Origin: Octopus sinensis
Lineage: Eukaryota
NCBI RefSeq assembly: GCF_006345805.1
Contig: NC_043020.1
Location: 13,268,001 to 13,332,000, forward strand
DNA: 64,000 nt
Reading direction: 5' to 3'
The notes below the pieces were generated by a model that saw nothing but the letters and a program-made list of their open reading frames with translations, did no database searches and had not been told where the DNA came from. This document shows positions 173-61,890 of the stretch, one piece after another. How positions within the stretch are numbered: the stretch's first letter is position 1; every line of letters begins with the position of its first letter. Position numbers and translations under genes: made by a program.

Positions 173-229
<57 letters not shown>

Positions 230-9384: not shown

Positions 9385-10265
9385 TATTCTTTTAATTGTT
9401 TCAGGCATTTTTGACTGCAGCCATGCTGGAGCACCCCCTTGAAGGATTTTATTCGAACCATAAAATTATTAACCATCTTACAAACAATAACTCTGAGCAC
9501 CTTTTCAAACTCCACCCGTCTAACACCCGTGGACATATTTACAAAGTCAGAAAACAGCACAGCTCCCATGACTTTAGGAAACATTTTTTCATGCTGAGAT
9601 TTGCTGAAGCATGGAACAAACTGCTGGCATCAGTTGTTAGTTGTCGGAGCACTGCATCCTTCAAAACTTCCATGCTTTCTGAGATTCGCCATGCTGGAGC
9701 ACCTCCTTGAAGGATTTTATTCGAACCATAAAATTAGTAACCATTTTACAAACAATAACTCTGAGCACCTTTTCAAACTCCACCCGTCTAACACCCGTGG
9801 ACATGTTTACAAAGTCAGAAAACAGCACAGCTCCCATGACTTTAGGAAACATTTTTTCACACTGAGAGTTGCTGAAGCACGGAACAAACTGCCCGCATCA
9901 GTTGTTAGTTGTCGGAGCTCTGCATCCTTCAAAACTTCCATGCTTTCTGAGATTCGCCAACACTACACCTGATTTTCTCCCCTCCATACACACACACAAG
10001 CATGTATCTGACTCGTACATTGTTCGCTTTCCAGACATTTGTACATTACTGCATATGCTTTATACACACTTTCTGACAAGTTGTGGTGCACCTGAGCACT
10101 GTATACAATAATCTCATTATTATTAAATCGACCCCAGGACTTATTTTTTAAAGCCTGGTACATATTCTATTGGTGTCTTTTGCTGAACTGCTAAGTTACA
10201 GATTTATACATACCAACACTGGTTGTCAAGCAGTGATGGGTGACAAACACAGACCCAAAGACAGA
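9385..10265 (-). mobile_element. SINE-A tail split by a CR1 insertion
   Basis: gccatgctggagcacc...attcgaac [insert] aaatcgaccccaggacttat resumes at ~10125. Confidence 0.75.
9459..10124 (+). mobile_element. CR1-clade LINE 3' fragment (ORF2 C-terminus and 3' UTR), partly duplicated
   Basis: Translation SNTRGHVYKVRK...FRKHFFTLRVAEA(W/R)NKLPASVV...FK is the typical CR1 ORF2 C-terminal motif; ends in (ATT)n. Confidence 0.8.
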
Positions 10266-19390: not shown

Positions 19391-19974
19391 CTAGATCTTT
19401 CATTAACTTAGAATCTTTCATTAAGATTCATTATTTTAGTTTTTTATTTCTTTAAGTTTCAAAGTTATTGGTGTTACCATTCAACCTCTCTTCTTCCCTA
19501 ATTTGTCCCTCAGCTAAGAGCGGGCTGCAATGAGATATAAATTAATATTTTATTCAATATGTGTGTTTCAAAAGATATTTCTTACTTTTGATTGCATGCC
19601 TTCATTTTTGGAAATTAAATCTGTCTCTAGTCAGAGCTAATGAGTAATTATTATTCATATGTAAATCTTAAAACGACTTAATTTACTTTATGCCACCCTA
19701 TCTCTGGAATATCTAGATAGAACTGACAATATTTATTTAGTCACAGATATGTTTCATCGGGGATTAAAAACACACTTAAATAAACCACATTTCGGGTAGA
19801 ATTCTTTGAAAAAAAAAACTAATGTATTTTTGATTTTATTTCCTCATCATTGCGGAGCTTCTCTTCCTGATAAATAAACTCCAGAACTATTTTTAGAAAT
19901 AATCAGCTGATATTTTATGTCAGTTTTATAGTAATATATCATATTACAATTTTATTTTAATATTTTATATCCAT

Positions 19975-20544: not shown

Positions 20545-20858
20545 ATACCTGTGCCGGTGGCACGTAAAAAGCACCATCCGAACGTGGCTGGTGCCAGCGC
20601 CGCCTTGACTGGCTTCTGTGCTGGTGGCACATAAAAAGCACCAACCGATCGTGGCCACTGCCAGCCACTCCTGGCACGTAAAAAGCACCCACTACACTCT
20701 TGGAGAGGTTGGCGTTAGGAAGGGCATCCAGCTGTCGAAACACTGCCAGATCAGACTGGAGCCTGGTGCAGCCTCCTGGCTTCCCAGACCCCGGTCGAAC
20801 CGGTTCCAACCCGTACTAGCAGGGAAAACGGATGTTAAACGATGATGATGATGATGAT
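20545..20858 (+). mobile_element. RTE 3'-UTR fragment
   Basis: Diagnostic motifs and (GAT)n tail. Confidence 0.85.
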
Positions 20859-20879
20859 TTTATACTAATATATGATATT

Positions 20880-21095: not shown

Positions 21096-21174
21096 ATAAT
21101 AATAAATCATCTTAAAATTTTATGCTATCATTTAATACTGTTATATGATATTGATTTCAAATTGTGCCATAAGG

Positions 21175-21351
21175 CGCAGAAGTGGGTGTGTGGTAAATTA
21201 CTTGCTTATGAACCACATGGTTCCAGGTTCAGTCTCACTGCGTGGTACCTTGGGCAAGTGTCTTCTGCTATAGCCTCGGGCCGACCAAAGTCTTGTGAGT
21301 GGATTTTGTAGACGGAACTGAAAGAAGCCTGTTGTATATATGTATATATAT

Positions 21352-21397
<46 letters not shown>

Positions 21398-21637
21398 GTG
21401 TGTGTGGTGTGTGTGTGTGTGTGTGTTTGTGTGTCTGTGTTTGTCCCGCCAACATCGCTTGACAACCGATGCTGGTGTGTTTACGTCCCTGTAACGTAGC
21501 GGTTCGGCAAAAGAGACCGATAGAATAAGTACTAGGCTTACAAAGAATAAGTTCTGGGGGGTCAATTTGCTCGACTAAAGGTGGTGCTCCAGCATGGCCA
21601 CAGTCATATGACTGAAACAAGTAAAAGAGTAAAGAGT
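21175..21637 (+). mobile_element. SINE-A full length
   Basis: Complete structure. Confidence 0.85.
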
Positions 21638-22179
21638 ATAAGGCCAGCAATTTGGAGGGGGTTAAGTCAATTACATTGACCCCCCCCCCCCAGTGCTCAA
21701 CTGGTTCTTGTTTTATTGACCCCCTCGAAAGGATGACAGGCAAAGTTAACATTGGTGGAATTTGAACTCAGAATGTAAAGACAAACAAAATACCACCAAA
21801 TATTTTGCCCAGTGTGCTCACAATTCTGCCAGCTTGCTGCCTAATAGTAATAAATAATCTTAAAATTTTATTTTATCATTTTATACTAATATATGTGGAG
21901 GCAGGTGGCTTAGTGGTTAGGGTGTTGGACTCATGATCGTAAGGTTGTGGTTTCGATTCCTGGACCGGGCGATGCTTTGTGTTCTTGAACAAAACACATT
22001 GTTTCACATTGCTCCAGGCCACTCAGCAGGCAAAAGTGAGTAATTCTGTGATGGACTGGCATCCCATCCAGGTGGGGGGAATATATATGCCATGAAACTG
22101 AAAACCAGCCCTTGTGAGTTGGCATGACTCATACAAAGTGATGGTTACTATAACCTGTAGGAGATTCCAGTGGGATGAT
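21581..22179 (+). repeat. Left arm of a ~600-bp inverted duplication
   Basis: Reverse complement of 24460-25061, including unique linkers between three SINE types. Confidence 0.9.
21895..22115 (+). mobile_element. SINE-D (tRNA-like head, CORE-like and V-like blocks)
   Basis: tggcttagtggttag...ggtttcgattcc; ctgtgatggactggcatcccatccagg resembles the V domain (from memory, needs alignment). Confidence 0.65.
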
Positions 22180-22479
22180 TTCATGTTGCTCCAGTCCACT
22201 CAACTGGCAAAATTGAGTAATCCTGCGATGGACCGGCGTCCCGTCCAGGTGGAGAATTTCTATGCCACTAAAACCAGGAAACCGACCCCTATGAGGCTGG
22301 CATGGCTCAGGAAGGAACATTTATTTTTTCATTTATATGCTAATATATAGCATTGATTTTAAATTTTGAAACAAGGCCAGTAGTTTGGAAGGAAGGGGTT
22401 AAGGCGGCGAGCTGGCAGAATTGTTAGCACGCCAGGCGAAATGCTCAGCAGTATTTCGTCTGCCGCTACGTCCTGAGTG

Positions 22480-23023
22480 CATGGAATTGTGGTGGAAGGT
22501 TATAAATCATTTTAAAACATGGTACCACAGGGTACCATATTTTTGTTGAAACGCACTGCTTTTGTTTCAAGTAATTTTGAGAATCATGAAGAATTTAGTC
22601 AAAATAAATTTGTCATTATTAAGTTTGTGTTTCAAACAGAATTTAACATGGAATTGTGATGGAAGGTTATTAATCATTTTTAATCATGGTACCATAGGGT
22701 ACCATATTTCTATTAAAATACACTGCTTTTGTTTCAAGTAATTTTGAGAATCATGAAGAATTTAGTCAAAATAAATTTGTCATTATTAAGTTTGTGTTTC
22801 AAACAGAACTTAACGTGGAATTGTGGTGGAAGGTTATAAATCATTTTAAAACATGGTACCACAGGGTACCATATTTCTGTTGAAATACACTGCTTTTGTT
22901 TCAAGTAATTTTGAGAATCATGAAGAATTAAGTCAAAATAAACTTGTCATTATTAAGTTCGTCTTTCAAACAGAAATTAACGTTGAATTATGATGGAAGG
23001 TTATTAATCATTTTAAAACATGG
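22480..23023. repeat. ~167-bp tandem repeat, about 3.2 copies, MITE-related
   Basis: Unit starts at 22480, 22647, 22813 and 22981. Confidence 0.9.
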
Positions 23024-23134
23024 AGCTTGTATGAAGACAAAAAGGAGTTGCGAGTGAAGTGGATTAATGAAGAGTTTTAATGGTCAGATATAATTTGTCC
23101 TTCGGCTGTAAATTCTGTTTATCTCTCATCACAG

Positions 23135-23192
23135 GTGATAAACCGTTTTTGGAACAAATGGCCCCTGCTCTATTTCCTTTGCGACATAACAG
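23135..23192 (+). CDS. Candidate 58-nt exon (VINRFWNKWPLLYFLCDIT or DKPFLEQMAPALFPLRHN)
   Basis: Acceptor tttatctctcatcacag, donor ACAG|gtaacg, two open frames, unique sequence. Confidence 0.4.
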
Positions 23193-23769
23193 GTAACGAG
23201 GCAGAGGGAGAAAGAGAGTGGTCAGAATAAAGCATCACCATTTATATATATATATATATGTATATATATGATGGATGAGAAATTAAGTTAGTGGCATGCA
23301 AGGAACTAATAGAATTCTCTCATGTGAGAACTGAAGAAATTAAGTTCAATTAAATCTCCAGTGAAACTTTGTCTAATTACAATATTATGTAATTAAGTTA
23401 TTAAGATAAGTTAATTGGATTTATGAGTCCTACAATAAACTAACAGCTGATAGTGTCAGATTGTGTGTGTGTGTGTGTGTGTCATAATGGAAGTATACCA
23501 ATTTATGCCTCTAAAAGACTTGAGTGACACCATGCAAACTAAGGAACCATTATCCAGAGTAAAACCGAAAGCCAGGTCCTAAGCTACGACACACTTTGAA
23601 CATCCTGGATTGCATCCGGAGAAGGTCAATTCCTTCAGCCGGTTGGTACTCCTTTGCTAACAGACACCCTTCCAACCTCTGACCCACAGTGGGGTGTGCT
23701 GTCTTCTCTCTCTGTCATTCCTCTCACTACTACTACTACTACTACTACTACTAATAATAATAATAATAA

Positions 23770-24270
23770 TAATAATCATTTAACGTCCGTTTTCCATGCT
23801 AGCATGAGTTGGACGGTTTTGACTGAGGACTGGTGAACCAGATGGCTGCACCGGGCTCCAGTCTTGATCTGGCAGAGTTTCTACAGCTGGATGCCCTTCC
23901 TAACGCCAACCACTTTGAGAGTGTAGTGGATGCTTTTTACGTGCCACATGCACAGGGGCCAGTCAGGCGGTACTGGCAATGACTTCGCTCGAATCTTTTT
24001 ACACGTGCCAGTGAAGAGATGTTGGTAATGATCACGCTCGAATGGTGCCCTTTTACGTGCCACGGGTACGTAAGCCAGTTGGCTGCTCTGGCAACAATCA
24101 CGCTCGGATGGTGTTCTTGACACCCTACTAGCACAGGCATAAGTGCCAGTAAGGCGAGGCTGTTAACGATCATACTCAAATAGCCGCTCTGTCAACGATC
24201 ACACTCATATGGGGCTCTTTGCACCCCGCTAGCACGGATGCCAGTCATCGAAATGATTTTGATTTGATTA
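23770..24270 (-). mobile_element. RTE 3'-UTR fragment, variant subfamily
   Basis: Diagnostic tail plus a longer variant body. Confidence 0.8.
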
Positions 24271-24459
24271 TAATAATAATAATAGCCGCCTCTGCTCCTC
24301 AGAGCCAACTATTCTCATAGGTTCACCATTCCAGCGTTCCCCAACCCCCTCATCATATCTCCACTCTTCTACCCTCTTAGTGTGTCCATCCCCCTTTTCC
24401 CCTCCCTCACCAACCACTATGTCCAAACCTTCATCTCCAGTACACCATACCCCCAGTAT

Positions 24460-25061
24460 ATCATCCCACTGGAATCTCCTACAGGTTATAGTAACCATCA
24501 CTTTGTATGAGTCATGCCAACTCACAAGGGCTGGTTTTCAGTTTCATGGCATATATATTCCTCCCCACCTGGATGGGATGCCAGTCCATCACAGAATTAC
24601 TCGCTTTTGCCTGCTGAGTGGCCTGGAGCAATGTGGAACAAAGTGTTTTGCTAAAGAACACAACACATTGCCCGGTCCAGGAATCGAAACCACAACCTTA
24701 CGATCATGAGTCCAACACCCTAACCACTAAGCCACCTGCCTCCACATATATTAGTATAAAATGATAAAATAAAATTTTAAGATTATTTATTACTATTTAG
24801 GCAGCAAGCTGGCAGAATTGTGAGCACACTGGGCAAAATATTTGGTGGTATTTTGTTTGTCTTTACATTCTGAGTTCAAATTCCACCAATGTTAACTTTG
24901 CCTGTCATCCTTTCGAGGGGTCAATAAAACAAGAACCAGTTGAGCACTGGGGGGGGGGGGGCTCAATGTAATTGACTTAACCCCCTCCAAATTGCTGGCC
25001 TTATACTCTTTACTCTTCTACTTGTTTCAATCATATGACTGCGGCCATGCTGGAGCACCAC
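24460..25061 (-). repeat. Right arm of the ~600-bp inverted duplication
   Basis: Reverse complement of 21581-22179. Confidence 0.9.
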
Positions 25062-25239
25062 ATGAGTCCAACACCCTAACCACTAAGCCACGTGCCTCCA
25101 CCACAGGTATTGACAGAGCATCAAGATTTTCAACCTCACTAGTGCTGGACAACTTTAAAAAGTCAAGGGCCCTGCTCCTTCCTTCAGGAGCAGCAAAAAT
25201 ATTAAAGAAAAAAGACTACAGAAAAACGGACAACAGATT

Positions 25240-27184: not shown

Positions 27185-27515
27185 CACGCATGGCTCAGTG
27201 GTTAGAGCGGCGAGCTTACAATCGTGAGGTTCTGAGTTCGAATCCCGGACCGGGCTGCGTGTTGTGTTCTTGAGCAAGACACTTTATTTCACGTTGCTTC
27301 AGTTCACTCAGCTGTAGAAATGAGTTGCAACATCATTGGTACCAAGCTGTATCGGCCCCTTTGCCTTTCCCTTGGATAACACTGGTGGCATGGAGAGGGG
27401 AGGCCGGTATGCACGGGCGACTGCTGGTCTCCCATAAAACAACCTTGCCCTGACTTGTGACTAGGAGGGTAACTTTCTAGGTGCAAACCCATGGTCAGTC
27501 ATGACCGAAGGGGGT
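27185..27515 (+). mobile_element. SINE-C (tRNA-like head, CORE-like centre, hairpin tail)
   Basis: tggctcagtggttagag (A box), gagttcgaatccc (B box), ggtcagtcatgaccgaagggggt tail. Confidence 0.85.
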
Positions 27516-27679
27516 CCCGACCCCTGACCGACTCTCCCCACCCCAAACTGACGAAGTAGGTGGAGTCAATGTTTGTTGCCATCTGCTGTAGGAAGAACAT
27601 GGGCAAGGGGGACATCCCAGAGGTGTTTCGTTTTAGGGTGGAAGGATTGGTCTTCGTATTAAGTGTTGGGTGAGGCCAA

Positions 27680-28555: not shown

Positions 28556-28868
28556 ATAAAGGGAGAGGGGTGCAAGTTCATCAGATGAGCTAGGTGGTAA
28601 ATAACTTTTTCCAATTGAGAGAAGTAGACTCTGTTGTAGGGGTAGAATTGGGTGGAGAGGACACAGCACTTAAATGTTTATAGCCACAAATGATTAATTA
28701 TTCTTAGTTATGGTGGGCCTGGGATGGATGTGTCTGACAGTAGCAGCCACATAGGTGTAGTTCTGTAGCGTGGGGTCACAGCTGGATTGTGCAGAGGGTC
28801 GACCACTGATCAGATGTAAAGGATTTCAATGAAAGTAGTTTTGGCAGTGTTCTATATATTTGTGTGGT

Positions 28869-29251: not shown

Positions 29252-30346
29252 AATTATTCTTAATTATGGTGGGCCTGGGATGGGTGTGTCGGACAGTAGC
29301 AGCCACATAGGTGTAGTTCTGTAGCGTGGGGTCACAGCTGGATTGTGCAGAGGGTCGACCACTGATCAGATGTAAAGGATTTCAATGAAAGTAGTTTTGG
29401 CAGTGTTCTATATATTCGTGTGGTTGGTATGAGAGATTTGTTTTATACACCCTGCTGATAGCAGCGAGATATCGGTGTCGAGAGAAAGACAGGATGCCTA
29501 AATATTCCGTTGAAAGAAAACAAGGAAGTGAAAAGCCAAAATAAAACAAATTTTGGTTTGAAGAATTTCTCCAACTGTTCTACAGATGCTGGGTTGAAAA
29601 GGTGACTGTGGAGTGAAATAAATAAGAGCTAAAACCTTGCTTCTATTTGTATGAAAATAGTTAAGTTAGTATTGGAAATATTTACTGTTTGCTCTATAAA
29701 TATTTATTATGGTAAATCTCTTAGTCATTCCACCCATAGCCACCACCTCCCACATTGGTTTGATGAGAAAATTGCTAGAGACTTTATATTCTTATAGTGT
29801 ATCTTCAACAAGTACCATCTCTCTCTCTCTCTCTCTCTCTCGCTCTCTTTCTCTCGCTCTCTCTCTCTCTCTCTTTCTCTCGCTCCCCTCCTCCCTCTCC
29901 CACTCTCCCTGTCCCATCTTACTCCCCATAGAAAGAGATAAAGTCACCCACTGCAAGTTGATAAAACACTCCTCAATGTTTATAGTGCTCCCACTGCTTA
30001 CAGCTCTGCTCTCTCACACCCTGTAGTTGCAGGTTGTTGAGAATCAAGAGCCTTTGGTTTGTAGACACTGTTAGAGGTAGAGTTTGAACCATGATCTTTT
30101 GTCATGTAATTTGGAACCAGCACCACCATCACATCATCATCATTTAATGTCTGTTTTCCATGCTGGCATGTTTTAGATGGTTTGAGCAGAGCTGGAGTGG
30201 TTTCTACAGTGGGATGTCCTTCCTAGCACCAACAACTTTACAGAACGTGCTGGGTGCCTTTTACGTGTCATCGGCATGATTGCCTGTCATTTCTTGGTCT
30301 TATTAAAGACTTTTATATTAATATGTGAAGGCACATGGCTCAGTGT

Positions 30347-30680
30347 GAAGGCGCATGGCTCAGTGGTTAGAGCGTCGAGCTTACGATCGTGAGGTTGTGA
30401 GCTCGAATCCCGGACCGGGCTGCGTGTTGTGTTCTTGAGCAAGGCACTTTATTTCACGTTGCTCCAGTTCACTCAGCTGTAGAAATGAGTTGCGACGTCA
30501 CTGGTGCCAAGCTGTATCGACCTTTGTCTTTCCCTTGGATAACACTGGTGGCGTGGAGAGGGGAGGCTGGTATGCACGGGCGACTGCTGGTCTTCCATAA
30601 ACAACCTTGCCCGGACTTGTGTCTAGGAGGGTAACTTTCTAGGTGCAATCCCATGGTCATTCATGACCGAAGGGGGTCTC
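30347..30680 (+). mobile_element. SINE-C full length, preceded by a ~21-bp head duplication
   Basis: gaaggcacatggctcagtgt-gaaggcgcatggctcagtggttag. Confidence 0.85.
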
Positions 30681-32470: not shown

Positions 32471-32512
<42 letters not shown>

Positions 32513-35193: not shown

Positions 35194-35237
<44 letters not shown>

Positions 35238-40270: not shown

Positions 40271-40429
40271 TCAGATCAGGTCACTTGCTATGCAAGTACA
40301 TCTCCATAAAAATATAGTCGTACACGAATATACATGTAGACATACAAATATGTATAAGTACACACACACACACATACACATGCAAACACAAACACACTAC
40401 ACATACATATTTTAGTGCCGGTGACACAT

Positions 40430-41410
40430 AAAAGGCATCCATGCCGGTGAGACGCAAGAGGCACTTGTGCCAGTGACATGTAAGGTGCATCCGTGCCAGT
40501 GACATGCAAAAGGAAACCATGCTGGTGACACGCAAATGGCACTTGTGCTGGAGACACGCAAATGGCACTTGTGCTGGAGACACACAAATGGCACCTGTGC
40601 TGGTGACACGCAAATGGCACTTGTGCTGGTGACACGCAAATGGCACTTGTGCTGGTGACACGCAAATGGCACTTGTGCTGGTGACACGCAAATGGCACTT
40701 GTGCTGGTGACACGCAAATGGCACTTGTGCTGGTGACACGCAAATGGCACTTGTGCTGGTGACACGCAAATGGCACTTGTGCTGGTGACACGCAAATGGC
40801 ACTTGTGCTGGTGGAACGCAAATGGCACCTGTGCTGGTGGCACGCAAATGGCACTTGTGCTGGTGACACGCAAATGGCACCTGTGCTGGTGGCACGCAAA
40901 TGGCACCTGTGCTGGTGGCACGCAAATGGCACCTGTGCTGGTGGCACGCAAATGGCACTTGTGCTGGTGGCACGCAAATGGCACTTGTGCTGGTGACACG
41001 CAAATGGCACCTGTGTTGGTGACACGCAAATGGCACCTGTGCTGGTAACACGTAAATGGCACTTGTGTTGCTGACATGCAAAAGGCATTTATGCTGGTGA
41101 CACACAAAAAGCAATCATGCCGGTGACACACTATGGGCACCCATGCTGGTGACACATGAAGAGCACCCTTGCCAGTGACATGTAAGAGGTGCACATGCTT
41201 GTGACACATAAAAGGCACTTTTGCCAGTGATGCACAATATGCACCCATGTTGGTGATAACATGAAAGACACCCAGTACAATCTGTGGAGTAGTTTGTGTT
41301 ATGAAGGGCATCCGGCCATAGAAACCAAGCCTGTTGCAGCTCTCTGGTTTACCAGATCCAGCCAAACTGCCTTACCATTGAAAAATGGACGCTAAATGAT
41401 GATGATGATG
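40430..41410 (+). mobile_element. Degenerate RTE 3' UTR containing a 26-bp minisatellite
   Basis: Unit gtgctggtgacacgcaaatggcactt, about 21 copies at 40519-41075, followed by an RTE-type tail and (GAT)n. Confidence 0.85.
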
Positions 41411-41687: not shown

Positions 41688-41726
<39 letters not shown>

Positions 41727-42237: not shown

Positions 42238-42260
42238 TATTAATATGCTGATAATAATAT

Positions 42261-42300
<40 letters not shown>

Positions 42301-42509
42301 TATTAATATGCTGATAATAATATAGATATATATTATATATATATATATAATATCATATTAATATGCTGATAATAATATTATAGATATATATAATATATAT
42401 ATATATCATATTAATATGCTGATAATAATATAGATATATATATATATATATATATATTATCTATATATATATATATATCATATTAATATGCTGATAATAA
42501 TATATAGAT

Positions 42510-52761: not shown

Positions 52762-52812
52762 GGTAGCTAGAGATGATAGCATTGGTTGTTTTTATGAACA
52801 CAAAGTTGTTAG
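52762..52812 (+). CDS. Candidate 51-nt symmetric exon (VARDDSIGCFYEHKVV)
   Basis: Strong acceptor (t)n-cag, donor AG|gtaggt, only one open frame (phase 2 to 2). Confidence 0.5.
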
Positions 52813-55305: not shown

Positions 55306-55813
55306 ATATTTACTGAGTTTGTCTTCTGTGGCACTGTTATGGACCATTATTCAATTGACCCATCACTGGTGCTGCCATAATAAATTTTGGTAATAAATCT
55401 TTCATTCAATAAAATTCTGTAAGTAAATATTTTCTGCTACAAGAGAAATACTATTTATAAATAAGGGAAATGGTTCTATGTTTTGTATTTGTTCTTGATG
55501 TATCAATAATCTATTTGACCTCTTAACAAAATATTTACTTGATAAAATATCGAATGATTTAGCTGAATAAATACCATCTTCTTTTCATCTCTCTTTTCAT
55601 TTCCTTCTCTTTCTTGTCGTAATGTTTACATCTGTGATATAACTGTTTTTTCTTCTAATCAAAATACGCATTAATTAAATTATGTTTTTACCTAGATATT
55701 GATTGATTGATTTTTTTCTTTCCCATATAGTTTTCTAATTACATATTAATTAGATTAAATGTACATTAATTATATGTTTATGGCAAAACAAAATCTAGGT
55801 TATGAAATTTTTC

Positions 55814-57241
55814 AAGTCGTAATCAGTAGGAAGGCAGACAAATCACACACGCCTTCAGGTAGATGGCCCTGCTCGATCTGTAGAAAAGGTGTAGGTAGAA
55901 ACTCTATAAGATGCACCAAGTGTAAGCTATGGACACATAAGAGGTGCAGCAATGTCAAAGGAAGGCTAACTAGGAAGATGGTTTTTGTATGTGGCAGATG
56001 CTCAGGAACAATAAACACTGAAAATGCTCTGAGACCAACTTCCGTCACTTTCCAGGGAGAGAAAACTAGAAATAGTTGATAGTTTCCGTTACCTAGGTGA
56101 CCAAGTCAGCAGCGGGGGCGGGTGTGCTGAAAGTGTAACTGCTAGAGTAAGAATAGCTTGGGCAAAGTTCAGAGAGCTCTTACCCCTGCTGGTGACAAAA
56201 GGCCTCTCGCACAGAGTGAAAGGCAGACTGTATGGCGTGTGTACGAACAGCCATGCTACATGGCAGTGAAACATGGGCCGTGACTGCTGAGGATATGCGT
56301 AAGCTCGCAAGAAATGAAGCCAGTATGCTCCGATGGATGTGTAATGTCAGTGTTCATAATCGACAGAGTGTAAGTACCTTGAGAGAAAAGCTGGACCTAA
56401 GAAGCATCAGTTGTGGTGTGCAAGAGAGACGTTTGCGCTGGTATGGTCATGTGGCGAGAATGGATGAAAGATAGTTGTGTGAAAAAGTGCACACCCTAGC
56501 GGTTGAGGGAACCTGTGGAAGAGGCAGACCCAGGAAAACTGGGACGAGGTGGTGAAGCACGACCTTCGAAATTTAGGTCTCACTGAGGAAATGACTAGAG
56601 ACCGAGTCCTATGGAAGTGTGCTGTGCGCGCGAGAAGACCCGGCAGGACAAGTGAGTCCATAACCCGTGGCCTTCTACTTGGGATGGAGCCAGCCTACGT
56701 ATGCATACCTTCCTTCTTGGGACACAAAACTCTACATGTGAAGACCTGTTGAGGCAAGTGAGGATCAGAAATGAAAATCGATCAATGGAAATTGCAGATG
56801 TGTTACCAGTGCGGTGGCATGTCGAAACTCTACTTGTGAAGACCCGTTGAGGCAAGTGAGGATCAGAATGGAAATCGATCAATGGAAATTGCAGATGTGT
56901 TACCAGTGCCGGTGGGATGATAAGAGAACCTTCCGTTTCGCGGACGTTGCCAGCACGCCCCGTTTCGTGTCCGTTGCCTTCCTCGCCTGGCCCTTGTGCC
57001 GGTGGCACATAAAAAGCACCATCCGTTCGTGGCCGTTTGCCAGCTCTGTCTGGCACCTGTGCGGGTGGCACGTAAAAAGCACCCACTACACTCACGGAGT
57101 GGTTGGCGTTAGGAAGGGCATCCAGCCGTAGAAACACTGCCAGATTTGACTGGGCCTGATGAAGCCTTCTGGCTTCACAGACCCCAGTAGAACCGTCCAA
57201 CCCATGCTAGCATGGAAAACGGACGCTAAACGATGATGATG
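55814..57241 (+). mobile_element. 5'-truncated RTE-clade LINE: frameshifted ORF2 C-terminus with PHD finger, plus full 3' UTR
   Basis: Peptides FRYLGD, LLPLL, LHGSETW, RRLRWYGHVARM and GRGRPRKT are RTE-typical; stop at 56653-56655; (GAT)n tail; several frameshifts. Confidence 0.9.
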
Positions 57242-57371: not shown

Positions 57372-57537
57372 AGGAGTGGCTGTGTGGTAAGTAGCTTGCT
57401 AACCAACCACATAGTTCCAGGTTCAGTCCCACTGCGTGGCCTCTTGGGCAAGTGTCTTCTGCTATAGCCCCGGGCCGACCAATACCTTGTGAGTGGATTT
57501 GGTAGACGGAAACTGAAAGAAGCCTGTCGTATATATG

Positions 57538-57576
<39 letters not shown>

Positions 57577-57780
57577 TTGTGTGTCTGTGTTTGTTCCCCT
57601 AGCATTGCTTGACAACCGATGCTGGTGTGTTTACGTCCCCGTCACTTAGCGGTTCGGCAAAAAGAGACCGATAGAATAAGTACTGGGCTTACAAAAAGAA
57701 TAAGTCCTGGGGTCAAGTTGCTCGATTAAAGGCGGTGCTCCAGCATGGCCGCAGTCAAATGACTGAAACAAGTAAAAAAG
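57372..57780 (+). mobile_element. SINE-A full length
   Basis: Complete structure. Confidence 0.9.
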
Positions 57781-57820
57781 ACAGTATCACATGCACGCGC
57801 ACACACATATACATATATAT

Positions 57821-58028
57821 CTCTCTTTTACTCTCTTTTACTTGTTTCAGTCATTTGACTGCGGCCATGCTGGAGCACCGCCTTAGTCGAGCAATCAACC
57901 CCGGGACTTATTCTTTGTAAGCCCAGTACCTATTCTATCGGATCTTTTGCCAAACTGCTAAGTAACGGGGACATAAACACACCAGCATCGGTTGTCAAGT
58001 AATGTTAGGGGGACAAACACAGACACAC

Positions 58029-58069
<41 letters not shown>

Positions 58070-58222
58070 GACGGGCTTCTTTCAGTTTCCGTCTACCAAA
58101 TCCACTCACAAGGCTTTGGTTGGCCCGAGGCTATAGTAGAAGACACTTGCCCAAAGTGTCATGCAGTGGGACTGAACCCGGAACCATGTGGTTGGTAAGC
58201 AAGCTATTTACCACACAGCCAC
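57821..58222 (-). mobile_element. SINE-A full length, inverted relative to both neighbours
   Basis: Complete structure. Confidence 0.9.
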
Positions 58223-58230
58223 ATGCGTAT

Positions 58231-58617
58231 AAGGTGTGGCTGTGTGATAAGAAGCTTACTTCCCAACCTCAGGGTCCTGGGTTCAGTCCTACTGCGTGGC
58301 AGTTTGAGCAAGTGTCTTCTATTATAGCCTTGGACCGACCAAAGCCTTGTGAGTGGATTTGGTAGACAGAAAGTGAAAGAAGCCCATCATATATCTATGT
58401 GTGTGTGTGTGTGTGTGCCTTTGTGTTTGTCTCCAACCATTGCCTGACAACCAATGGTGGTATGTTTACATCTCTGTAACTTAGCAGTTCAGCAAAAAAG
58501 ATCAATAGAATAAGTACCAGTACTTGAAAAAGAAAAATGTACTGGGGTCGATTCAATCTTCAAGATGGTACCCTTGCATGGTCACAGTCTAATGACCAAA
58601 ACAGGTTAAAGATAAGA
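58231..58617 (+). mobile_element. SINE-A, older copy
   Basis: Head, microsatellite and degenerate tail. Confidence 0.75.
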
Positions 58618-59131: not shown

Positions 59132-59231
59132 NNNNNNNNNNNNNNNNNNNNNNNNNNNNNNNNNNNNNNNNNNNNNNNNNNNNNNNNNNNNNNNNNNNNN
59201 NNNNNNNNNNNNNNNNNNNNNNNNNNNNNNN
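59132..59231. other. Assembly gap (100 N)
   Basis: Direct reading. Confidence 1.
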
Positions 59232-61520: not shown

Positions 61521-61589
61521 TAATATAATAATAATATATTAGTATTTATATATATATATATATTATATATATTATATATATATATATAT

Positions 61590-61890
61590 ATGGAGGTGCA
61601 TGGCTTAGTGGTTAGGGTGTTGGACTCCCAATCATAAGATTGTGGTTTCAATTCCTGGACTGGGTGTGATGCCTTGTGCTCTTGCAAAACACTTCACTTC
61701 ATGTTGCTTTAGTCAACTCAGCTGTAGAAAGAGTACCACTAGTGGAGGCATGTTGCTTTGTGGTTAGGATGTCAGATTCATGACCGCAAGATTGTGATTT
61801 CAATCCCTGGACTGGGCAATTTGTTGTATTCTTGAGCAAAACACTTCATTTCACTTTGATACTGTCGACTTAGCTGTAGAAATGAGTTTA
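61590..61890 (+). mobile_element. Two tandem SINE-C/D heads
   Basis: tggcttagtggttagg...cttgagcaaaacac...cagctgtagaaa occurs twice. Confidence 0.7.

What the first reader, a model, noticed from the sequence alone, without database searches (positions are those of the whole stretch)
21581..25061. ~600-bp composite inverted duplication enclosing a candidate exon
Seen: 21581-22179 and 24460-25061 are reverse complements across a SINE-A tail, SINE-B, a unique AT linker, SINE-D and further unique sequence. This makes it a local duplication, not two independent insertions. Identity looks above 90% by eye. The 2.28-kb loop holds the well-formed candidate exon 23135-23192. Known: long intronic inverted repeats promote exon skipping or back-splicing and are ADAR substrates, and coleoids edit RNA heavily. 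Inference: a structural switch for this exon or an editing hotspot.
Basis: partly seen in the sequence, partly recalled or inferred. Interest (0 to 1): 0.7.

Follow-up and report, generated by a model that had tools for sequence, protein, structure and literature searches.

The report
Young local inverted duplication in octopus DNA
A 600-base stretch of SINE-rich octopus DNA was copied in reverse orientation 2.3 kb away, most likely as a scar of DNA-break repair; it is an ordinary kind of rearrangement, it would form a long RNA hairpin if transcribed, and the "exon" it encloses has no support.

Summary
21581-22179 and 24460-25061 are reverse complements (587/603 columns, 97.3%), 2280 nt apart. 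This is the longest high-identity repeat pair in the window; other repeat pairs have a median identity of 83%.

The arms share several repeat elements in the same order plus about 40 nt of non-repeat flank, so this is a segmental duplication. Both arm ends cut through older elements that are complete only on the left, so the left arm is the source.

The right copy has no target-site duplication and shows 0-1 nt of junction overlap. It abuts a 41-nt SINE-D head that is probably the remnant of an older SINE at the target site. This fits break repair or template switching, not transposition.

Divergence is patchy. All 11 substitutions lie in two SINE patches, with none in the other 506 nt.

The candidate exon 23135-23192 has reasonable splice sites. 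Such intervals are expected by chance about 0.4 times per strand, and neither open frame matches any protein, although octopus proteins are in the collection.

Either transcript would form a duplex of about 590 bp, a strong ADAR substrate. Transcription could not be tested.

Verdict: real, ordinary, probably neutral.

The parts
21168..21641 (+). Full-length 'SINE-A' copy with internal (TA)n(TG)n microsatellite (21335-21444). Only its last ~50 nt (21581-21630) lie in the left arm.
   Evidence: 21168-21641 matches 41894-41455 over 479 nt at 80%; 24 copies match 21440-21580 and continue through 21583-21630; microsatellites.
21581..22179 (.). Left arm, the source copy of the inverted duplication (599 nt).
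   Evidence: alignment. Polarity: both ends cut older elements that are complete only here.
21631..21845 (-). 'SINE-B' copy in minus orientation. 21701-21845 is well conserved in the family; 21631-21700 is poorly conserved.
   Evidence: ~20 copies at 72-80% for 21701-21845, and only short weak hits for 21631-21700.
21846..21894 (.). It is not unique: it is part of a recurrent motif next to SINE-B heads, and the first copy of a ~28-nt direct repeat.
   Evidence: copies at 21100-21146 (87%), 19930-19969 (85%) and 20854-20873 (95%); 21867-21894 vs 22320-22348, 26/29.
21895..22135 (+). 'SINE-D' copy. By eye it has A-box-like (TGGCTTAGTGG) and B-box-like (GGTTTCGATTCC) motifs. It contains the divergent patch 21971-22037.
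   Evidence: family homology starts at 21895 and ends near 22135-22140. No tRNA call from ARAGORN or Rfam, so the tRNA-like head is a reading, not a test.
22140..22179 (.). Non-repeat sequence at the inner end of the left arm, 100% identical in the right arm (24460-24499).
   Evidence: the only hit is the partner arm; other SINE-D copies diverge here.
22180..22319 (+). 5'-truncated SINE-D fragment, the first element of the loop. It is absent from the right locus.
   Evidence: 85.7% to 54236-54097 and 78% to 22003-22131; the right inner flank shows no similarity.
22480..23023 (.). Tandem repeat in the loop, 167-nt unit x 3.3 copies, 92% matches.
   Evidence: (D1).
23135..23192 (+). Not supported as an exon.
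   Evidence: chance expectation 0.4 per strand; no protein match; no unusual local RNA structure, z = -1.5.
23769..24170 (-). Another SINE-type repeat in the loop (17-21 copies in the window), preceded by (ACT)n(TAA)n at 23726-23776.
   Evidence: I5, I8, I11.
24171..24459 (.). Non-repeat flank of the right copy (inner side). Junction J1 at 24459|24460 has no overlap with the source context.
   Evidence: no other copy; junction sequences.
24460..25061 (.). Right arm, the derived inverted copy (602 nt).
   Evidence: It truncates SINE-A on one side and the SINE-D + 49 nt + fragment unit on the other.
25061..25101 (-). 41-nt SINE-D head abutting the right arm, sharing 1 nt with it at 25061. Most likely the remnant of an older SINE-D at the target site.
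   Evidence: 40/41 identical to both arms' SINE-D heads; its one difference is the family-consensus base where both arms share a private base, and it ends exactly at the family's 5' terminus.

Best explanation
This is a young, local, inverted segmental duplication in a SINE-dense, apparently non-coding stretch of an octopod genome.

Shown:
- A 599-nt piece of the left locus (21581-22179) is present again, reverse-complemented, at 24460-25061.
- The piece comprises a SINE-A tail, a SINE-B, an AT stretch, a SINE-D and about 40 nt of non-repeat flank.
- The left copy is the source, because both of its ends run on into older elements that the right copy truncates.
- The right copy has no target-site duplication.
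- Its junctions show 0 and 1 nt of overlap.

Inferred origin:
- A DNA break occurred in or beside an older, oppositely oriented SINE-D at the right-hand site. Nucleotides 1-41 of that SINE survive at 25061-25101.
- The break was repaired by copying about 600 nt from the nearby left locus, by microhomology-primed or template-switch synthesis.
- The displaced new strand was then end-joined.

Inferred later history: the copies are either very young or kept alike by arm-to-arm conversion, since there are no substitutions in 506 nt. Two short SINE patches (21600-24 and 21971-22037, 8-12% divergent) carry sequence of other ancestry. The likely cause is short ectopic conversion from other SINE copies, or switching to another SINE template during repair synthesis.

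Inferred consequence: if one transcript spans both arms, on either strand, it folds into a near-perfect duplex of about 590 bp that ADAR would hyper-edit. I see no evidence of any selected function and none for an enclosed exon.
For: - Exact arms and 97.3% identity.
- Best pair in the window, against a median of 83%, and the only complex inverted pair of at least 95% within 5 kb.
- Composite content, including non-repeat flank shared at 100%.
- Polarity, outer side: SINE-A is full-length on the left only.
- Polarity, inner side: SINE-D + 49 nt + truncated SINE-D is flanked by a ~28-nt direct repeat on the left only, and the right flank is unrelated.
- Junctions show 0 and 1 nt of overlap, and there is no TSD of 6 nt or more.
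- The 41-nt head ends at the SINE 5' terminus and carries the consensus base where both arms share a private one.
- Patchy divergence: all 11 substitutions lie in SINE-A/D segments (P=3e-4) and the longest substitution-free run is 347 nt (P=7e-4). The probability of no substitution in the other 506 nt under a uniform rate is 8e-5, and all indels are in homopolymer runs.
- L-R divergence across SINE-D and the 49-nt flank is 0/76, 8/67, 0/93 and 0/49.
- Arm cofold is -1135 kcal/mol, with 589 intermolecular pairs and perfect runs up to 128 bp.
- Octopod origin.
- Literature: hyper-editing in octopus and other animals targets long near-perfect duplexes formed by nearby inverted repeats (PMC5625713, PMC9989829). 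Templated and inverted insertions at breaks show 0-4 nt of junction microhomology (PMC11724301).
Against: - No independent reads, second haplotype or sister-species locus could be obtained. The 'empty' right site is therefore inferred, not seen.
- The direction of repair synthesis and the role of the old SINE-D cannot be determined from one sequence.
- The 41-nt head is 40/41 identical to the arms, against 82-92% for other copies in the window. That would also fit a second template switch back into the source.
- Genome-wide copy number of the 'unique' arm parts is unknown, because only 64 kb were visible.
- The two divergent patches need an extra event under any model.
- Neutrality is a default, not a result.
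Confidence: 0.7

Rival explanations
1. One reading: the inverted arms sit in the introns flanking a real cassette exon (23135-23192) and act as an RNA-structure switch, looping the exon out for skipping or driving back-splicing into a circular RNA.
For: AG|GT borders with a good polypyrimidine tract and two open frames. Only 2 intervals on the + strand and 0 on the - strand score as well, against 0.4 expected per strand. A second exon-like interval on the same strand (52762-52812) is phase-compatible with frame 2. The arms would pair strongly. That flanking inverted repeats promote circularisation and skipping is established knowledge from Alu-flanked circRNAs (my own knowledge).
Against: One such interval by chance is expected in about a third of 64-kb strands, and it was picked by eye from the whole window. 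No protein shares three 5-mers with either frame or with the joined peptide, while octopus proteins are in the collection. There is no Pfam domain or long ORF in the loop and no convincing coding exon anywhere in the window. The donor lacks the consensus +5 G. Nothing shows the region is transcribed.
Confidence: 0.05
2. Assembly artefact: one arm does not exist in the animal, through a chimeric or fold-back read or a mis-merged haplotype.
For: Inverted duplications are a known assembly error mode. All 4 indels between the arms lie in homopolymer runs, where consensus errors are common. The window contains a scaffold gap (59132-59231).
Against: Fold-back read artefacts give adjacent, near-100% palindromes. 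Here the arms are 2280 nt apart with non-repeat sequence in the loop. Each arm joins different unique flanks. The arms differ at 11 substitutions concentrated in two patches. The gap is 34 kb away.
Confidence: 0.05
3. The two arms are separate insertions of a mobile composite element that is repeated genome-wide, or the terminal inverted repeats of a foldback-type DNA transposon spanning 21581-25061.
For: Only 64 kb could be searched, so the genome-wide copy number of the 'unique' parts is unknown. Long terminal inverted repeats exist in foldback elements (my own knowledge).
Against: There is no target-site duplication around either the right copy or the whole unit. The left arm's outer end lies in the middle of a full SINE-A, and its inner end lies inside an older unit with its own flanking direct repeat, so the arm ends are not element termini. 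No other copy of the junction-specific or non-repeat parts occurs among the ~24, ~20 and ~12 copies of the three SINE families in the window. There is no transposase-like ORF in the loop.
Confidence: 0.05
4. A hairpin-RNA locus: the transcript's 590-bp stem is diced into endogenous small interfering RNAs directed against the three SINE families, as at Drosophila hpRNA loci.
For: The stem is long and near-perfect and consists largely of SINE sequence with many genomic targets. Inverted duplication is the known birth route of hpRNA loci and young plant MIRNA genes (my own knowledge).
Against: There is no evidence of transcription or small RNAs. The 2.3-kb loop is much longer than the short loops the hyper-editing paper associates with elevated editing (PMC5625713). 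Heavy ADAR editing in octopus (PMC5625713) would be expected to unwind such a stem.
Confidence: 0.04

Closest known systems
Templated or inverted insertions at DNA breaks and microhomology-mediated template switching (FoSTeS/MMBIR-type events; yeast break-repair insertions in PMC11724301; short-range template switches in apes in PMC7954356)
   Same: A nearby sequence is copied in reverse orientation and creates an inverted repeat. Junctions have 0-4 nt of overlap and there is no target-site duplication. The copy may contain more than one piece from the same locus.
   Different: Size. Short-range template switches have a median of 12 nt and a maximum of 128 nt (PMC7954356), and yeast foldback insertions are mostly under 14 bp and reach about 150 bp (PMC11724301). 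This copy is 599 nt, taken 2.3-3.5 kb away. It lies between those events and the kb-to-Mb rearrangements of human genomic disorders. The enzymology is unknown in cephalopods.
Inverted SINE pairs (such as inverted Alu pairs) that form dsRNA and are hyper-edited by ADAR (PMC526178, PMC5625713, PMC9989829)
   Same: Two nearby reverse-oriented copies of repeat sequence could pair within one transcript. Octopus is reported to have exceptionally high hyper-editing.
   Different: Ordinary pairs arise from independent insertions and are diverged: 70-87% for the other 92 pairs within 5 kb in this window. This pair arose by duplicating a composite segment, is 97-100% identical over 600 nt, and includes non-repeat sequence. 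Its arms are more than 2 kb apart, so the ±2 kb criterion of PMC5625713 would not count it.
Palindromes and inverted segmental duplications kept alike by arm-to-arm gene conversion, which can flip the spacer by recombination (my own knowledge, e.g. human sex-chromosome palindromes)
   Same: Inverted arms around a unique spacer, with long stretches of no divergence next to divergent patches.
   Different: Those arms are tens of kb to Mb long and carry genes. Here the arms are 0.6 kb of SINE-rich DNA. Neither conversion nor spacer inversion has been shown.
Inverted-repeat-flanked exons that circularise or are skipped (my own knowledge)
   Same: Complementary sequences on either side of an AG...GT interval.
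   Different: Neither the exon nor the transcript is established here.

Membership tests
Local inverted segmental duplication made by break repair or template switching | Two nearby copies in opposite orientation that share several unrelated elements in the same order, plus non-repeat sequence | tested here: met
   SINE-A tail, SINE-B, AT stretch, SINE-D and ~40 nt of non-repeat flank, colinear, 97.3% identical.
Local inverted segmental duplication made by break repair or template switching | Breakpoints without extended homology (0 to a few nt of microhomology) and no target-site duplication | tested here: met
   J1 0 nt, J2 1 nt, no direct repeat of 6 nt or more around the copy. The breakpoints lie in different, non-homologous elements.
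Local inverted segmental duplication made by break repair or template switching | A source copy and a derived copy can be told apart | tested here: met
   SINE-A, and the unit SINE-D + 49 nt + fragment with its flanking ~28-nt repeat, are complete only in the left locus.
Local inverted segmental duplication made by break repair or template switching | An ancestral 'empty' target site exists in a haplotype or related species | not testable with these tools
   No octopus genomic DNA collection is available. Exact-product look-ups and a homology search with junction ORFs found nothing.
Foldback / long-TIR DNA transposon | Target-site duplication flanking the whole element | tested here: not met
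   only a 5-nt chance match within 25-nt flanks, not adjacent to the ends.
Foldback / long-TIR DNA transposon | Arm ends are element termini, shared by other copies | tested here: not met
   the left arm's ends fall inside older elements, and there are no other copies of the composite in the window. Whole-genome copy number was not testable.
ADAR hyper-editing substrate (long intramolecular dsRNA) | Nearby inverted sequences able to form a long, near-perfect duplex | tested here: met
   589 intermolecular pairs, -1135 kcal/mol on either strand, perfect runs up to 128 bp.
ADAR hyper-editing substrate (long intramolecular dsRNA) | Both arms lie on one transcript, and A-to-G clusters are seen in RNA reads | not testable with these tools
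   No RNA-seq data or annotation was available. The DNA differences between arms show no one-directional A>G excess, so there is no sign of an edited RNA intermediate.
Inverted-repeat-flanked cassette or circular-RNA exon | A real exon with used splice sites between the arms | tested here: inconclusive
   site quality is only modestly above chance (2 on the + strand against 0.4 expected); no protein match; no domain. Use of the sites in RNA was not testable.
Inverted-repeat-flanked cassette or circular-RNA exon | Skipping or back-splice junction reads | not testable with these tools
   No transcript data.

The most novel reading that the evidence does not exclude
In octopus genomes, the long, complex, near-perfect dsRNA-forming structures may arise mainly from local inverted duplications made during break repair, like this one, rather than from pairs of independently inserted SINEs, which are too diverged. 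In this window no SINE pair reaches 95%. The only sequences meeting the published '95% inverted partner within 2 kb' criterion are (TA)n microsatellites. If so, break-repair scars, not transposition, would supply the strongest ADAR (or Dicer) substrates. This locus would then be a heavily edited or small-RNA-producing hairpin whenever it is transcribed.
Probability: 0.15. Interest if true: 0.45.

Novelty: new member of a known kind. Interest (0 to 1): 0.2.

Why it matters
On its own it matters little. It is a clean, well-resolved example of a small inverted segmental duplication with a readable junction history, in a genome where such events are seldom described base by base.

It does bear on one open point. 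Octopus shows exceptionally high RNA hyper-editing and an unusually high load of near-perfect local inverted repeats (PMC5625713), and the passages I read from that paper explain the frog's excess but not the octopus's.

This window suggests two components worth separating genome-wide. One is self-complementary microsatellites. The other is rare break-repair duplications that give much longer and more perfect duplexes than SINE pairs do.

The pair could also mediate inversion of the 2.3-kb spacer, which is a source of structural polymorphism and of assembly trouble.

Tried and rejected
1. Protein search with both open frames of the candidate exon, joined to the phase-compatible interval 52762-52812: no candidate at all.
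2. Exact-product look-ups of five window ORFs spanning the arm junctions or the exon: none on record. A Logan run (SRR11869391) does hold octopus-like contigs, but nothing from this locus.
3. Homology search with the junction-spanning 85-aa ORF, hoping for allelic or orthologous ORFs, including an empty site: nothing.
4. Rfam at gathering threshold on the whole window and at E≤1 on 21100-25200: only microsatellite noise, and no tRNA match to the SINE-D head. ARAGORN found none.
5. Model rejected: the right-hand SINE-D plus 49 nt was an independent insertion, and only 355 nt were copied by homology-primed synthesis. This would neatly explain the duplicated 41-nt head. I rejected it as the main model because the 49 nt lie beyond the end of SINE-D family homology, and in the left locus they are internal to an older unit with its own flanking repeat.
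6. SINE-SINE homologous recombination as the origin: rejected, because the breakpoints lie in non-homologous elements.
7. Retro-copy of an edited RNA: rejected. There is no poly(A) or tail, no target-site duplication, and no directional A>G excess.
8. A shortlist of exon-like intervals in non-repeat sequence gave only five weak candidates. I ran no further search on them.
9. I did not scan the metagenome, viral or prokaryotic genome collections for this locus, because they cannot be expected to hold octopus DNA.
Full report
**Observation**

21581-22179 (599 nt) is the reverse complement of 24460-25061 (602 nt). There are 587 identical columns out of 603 (97.3%), with 11 substitutions and 5 indel columns. 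The repeat finder reports the same relationship as five abutting pieces. The spacer 22180-24459 is 2280 nt.

In an all-against-all comparison of the window, this pair is the longest match at 93% identity or more. For the 832 repeat pairs found, the median identity of pairs of at least 100 nt is 82.8% and the 99th percentile is 94.7%. Of 93 inverted pairs separated by 5 kb or less, the other 92 are ordinary SINE pairs at about 70-87%.

**Organism and setting**

The window is 59% repeated within itself and rich in microsatellites. It has no long host-gene ORF. A PHD-finger ORF at 55759-56079 finds named relatives only in *Octopus bimaculoides*, some annotated as reverse-transcriptase-domain proteins, at 59-90% identity. 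The window is therefore octopod DNA. The species cannot be fixed from a transposon-derived ORF. Rfam finds nothing at gathering threshold.

**Anatomy of the arms**

Copy-number profiling and family alignments give the following, left arm from outside to inside.

| Range | Content | Copies in window |
|---|---|---|
| 21581-21630 | Last ~50 nt of a ~470-nt SINE ('A', whole copy 21168-21641) | ~24-27 |
| 21631-21845 | A second SINE ('B'), minus orientation; 21701-21845 conserved | ~20, at 72-80% |
| 21846-21894 | AT-rich stretch, not unique | 3 partial copies, 85-95% |
| 21895 to ~22135 | A third SINE ('D') | ~12, at 71-87% |
| ~22140-22179 | Non-repeat sequence | Partner arm only, at 100% |

The arms share several unrelated elements in the same order. 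They also share their private junctions and non-repeat flank, at an identity far above that within any of the families.

**Which copy is the source**

- On the outer side, the left arm starts in the middle of a full-length SINE-A that runs on for about 410 nt upstream. The right arm carries only the tail.
- On the inner side, the left arm ends inside an older unit: SINE-D + 49 nt + a 5'-truncated SINE-D (21895-22319). That unit is flanked by a direct repeat of about 28 nt (21867-21894 and 22320-22348, 26/29 identical).
- The right copy stops after the 49 nt, and its flank is unrelated to what follows on the left.

Both ends thus truncate elements that are complete only on the left. The left arm is the source and the right arm is the derived copy.

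**Junctions of the derived copy**

- At the inner junction (24459|24460) the source context and the target flank share no bases.
- At the outer end, the arm abuts a 41-nt SINE-D head (25061-25101) and shares one base with it.
- There is no target-site duplication of 6 nt or more around the copy or around the whole 21581-25101 unit.

The 41-nt head is 40/41 identical to the SINE-D heads inside both arms. Two facts argue that it is the remnant of a separate, older SINE-D at the target site, not a second piece copied from the source:

1. It ends exactly at the family's 5' terminus.
2. At its one difference it carries the family-consensus base, where both arms share a private base.

The alternative is a second template switch back into the source, with a later arm mutation spread by arm-to-arm conversion. 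I cannot exclude it.

Either way, the absence of a target-site duplication, the minimal junction overlap and the breakpoints in non-homologous elements exclude transposition and SINE-SINE homologous recombination. They fit repair of a break by copying from a nearby template followed by end joining. Such events are described at smaller scale in yeast (PMC11724301) and apes (PMC7954356) and at larger scale in human rearrangements.

**Divergence is a mosaic**

All 11 substitutions fall in the SINE-A tail (21600, 21612, 21624) or in SINE-D (eight between 21971 and 22037).

- The probability that all 11 fall in those segments by chance is 3e-4.
- The longest substitution-free run is 347 nt (P = 7e-4).
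- Outside the two patches there is no substitution in 506 nt (P = 8e-5 under a uniform rate; 95% upper bound on divergence 0.6%).
- Across SINE-D and the 49-nt flank, the arm-to-arm differences run 0/76, 8/67, 0/93 and 0/49.
- Within the 67-nt patch, each arm has private, non-consensus states.

That patch differs by 12%, which is what two different family members show. The four indels are all in homopolymer runs and could be slippage or consensus error.

I read the patches as sequence of other ancestry. Short ectopic conversion from other SINE copies would explain why only SINE segments are affected. Transient use of another SINE template during repair synthesis is the alternative.

The rest is either very young or homogenised between the arms. 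The overall distance of 1.9% therefore cannot be used for dating. The substitutions show no one-directional A>G excess, so nothing points to an edited RNA intermediate.

**The candidate exon**

23135-23192 has a good polypyrimidine tract and CAG|G acceptor. Its donor is CAG|gtaacg, which lacks the consensus G at +5. Two frames are open.

- With a rough splice-site scoring matrix of my own, intervals at least as good in both sites and with an open frame number two on the + strand (this one and 52762-52812) and none on the - strand.
- Random sequence of the same first-order composition gives 0.4 per strand. That is suggestive at best, given that the interval was chosen by eye from 64 kb.
- A protein search with both frames, including the phase-compatible join to 52762-52812, found no protein sharing even three 5-residue words. 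The collection does hold *O. bimaculoides* proteins.
- The loop has no Pfam-bearing or long ORF. The local RNA fold is unremarkable (z = -1.5).
- A relaxed scan of non-repeat sequence found only five weak exon-like intervals in the whole window.

The exon is unsupported. A non-coding or unannotated exon cannot be excluded without RNA data.

**What the structure would do**

Cofolding the arms as RNA gives 589 intermolecular base pairs and about -1135 kcal/mol on either strand, with perfect runs up to 128 bp. Long, near-perfect duplexes formed by nearby inverted repeats are the main targets of ADAR hyper-editing across animals. *O. bimaculoides* is reported to have an exceptionally high hyper-editing rate (PMC5625713; see also PMC9989829). 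SINE fragments are common in octopus brain transcripts and lncRNAs (PMC9115989).

If one transcript spans both arms, heavy editing is the expected passive outcome. Whether the region is transcribed could not be tested. At the DNA level, the arms could also mediate inversion of the spacer and arm-to-arm conversion.

**How unusual is it**

PMC5625713 reports that 0.44% of random octopus 50-mers have a >95% inverted partner within ±2 kb. Applying a similar criterion to this window gives 0.47%, but every qualifying site is a self-complementary (TA)n-type microsatellite. No SINE pair qualifies. The present pair, with arms 2.28 kb apart, would not be counted by that criterion.

The kind of object, a dsRNA-capable local inverted repeat, is well known. 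This instance is stronger than anything else in the window, and it arose by duplication rather than by paired insertions. One window cannot say how common such duplications are.

**Attempts to obtain independent evidence failed**

- Exact look-ups of five ORFs spanning the junctions or the exon: nothing on record.
- A homology search with a junction-spanning ORF: nothing.

The structure therefore rests on a single assembly. An artefact is unlikely. The arms are separated by non-repeat sequence, join different unique flanks, and differ in a structured way. Only long reads can close the point.

**Verdict**

The 'exon' is unsupported, the 'switch' is speculative, and the 'editing hotspot' is plausible but conditional and passive.

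This is a new, nicely resolved member of a known kind: a small inverted segmental duplication left by break repair in repeat-rich DNA. It is of modest interest.

Noticed in passing
window 177-229, 32471-32512, 35194-35233, 41688-41726, 42257-42296, 42434-42472, 61547-61590: With a criterion like that of PMC5625713 (inverted partner at least 95% identical, at least 40 nt, within 2 kb), 0.47% of the window qualifies. That is close to the published genome-wide 0.44% for octopus, but every qualifying site is a self-complementary (TA)n-type microsatellite and none is a SINE pair. The published 'near-perfect dsRNA potential' of octopus may be driven largely by such microsatellites.
   Followed up: partly
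window 57376-58398: A cluster of inverted SINE-derived arms with short spacers: 58060-58223 / 58235-58398 (164 nt, 86%, only 11 nt apart), 57376-57567 / 58031-58222 (192 nt, 88%) and 57579-57662 / 57945-58028 (84 nt, 92%). This is a tighter hairpin geometry than the finding, though more diverged.
   Followed up: partly
window 21867-21894 and 22320-22348: A direct repeat of about 28 nt (26/29 identical) flanks SINE-D + 49 nt + a 5'-truncated SINE-D (21895-22319). It looks like the long target-site duplication of one older composite or dimer-like insertion into an AT-rich SINE-B-associated motif.
   Followed up: partly
TAG|gtaggt). One frame is open, it lies in a 1.6-kb non-repeat block, and it is phase-compatible with frame 2 of 23135-23192. 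No protein match.
   Followed up: partly
window 40281-41365: A minisatellite of about 1 kb whose self-matches are offset by multiples of 26 nt. It produces spurious ORFs of 266-317 aa on the minus strand.
   Followed up: no
window 9396-9972 (+): A tandem duplication (9420-9691 / 9688-9959, 96%) of a segment whose ORFs resemble, by eye, the C-terminal tail of a non-LTR retrotransposon protein. There was no Pfam hit.
   Followed up: no
window 55759-56079 (+): A 106-aa ORF with a PHD finger (Pfam E = 5.8e-6). Its relatives are Octopus bimaculoides proteins, some named reverse-transcriptase-domain proteins, so it is probably a retroelement-derived fragment. It served as the taxonomic anchor.
   Followed up: yes
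window 27187-27516 / 30352-30678 and 28696-28868 / 29252-29424: Two further local direct duplications at unusually high identity for this window (93.3% over 330 nt, and 97.7% over 173 nt). Local segmental copying may be recurrent in this region.
   Followed up: no
window 22480-23023: A 167-nt unit repeated 3.3 times (92% matches) in the loop, 112 nt upstream of the candidate exon. It has no other copy in the window.
   Followed up: no
window 59132-59231: A run of 100 N (a scaffold gap) inside a microsatellite-rich stretch. It is 34 kb from the finding and does not bear on it.
   Followed up: no
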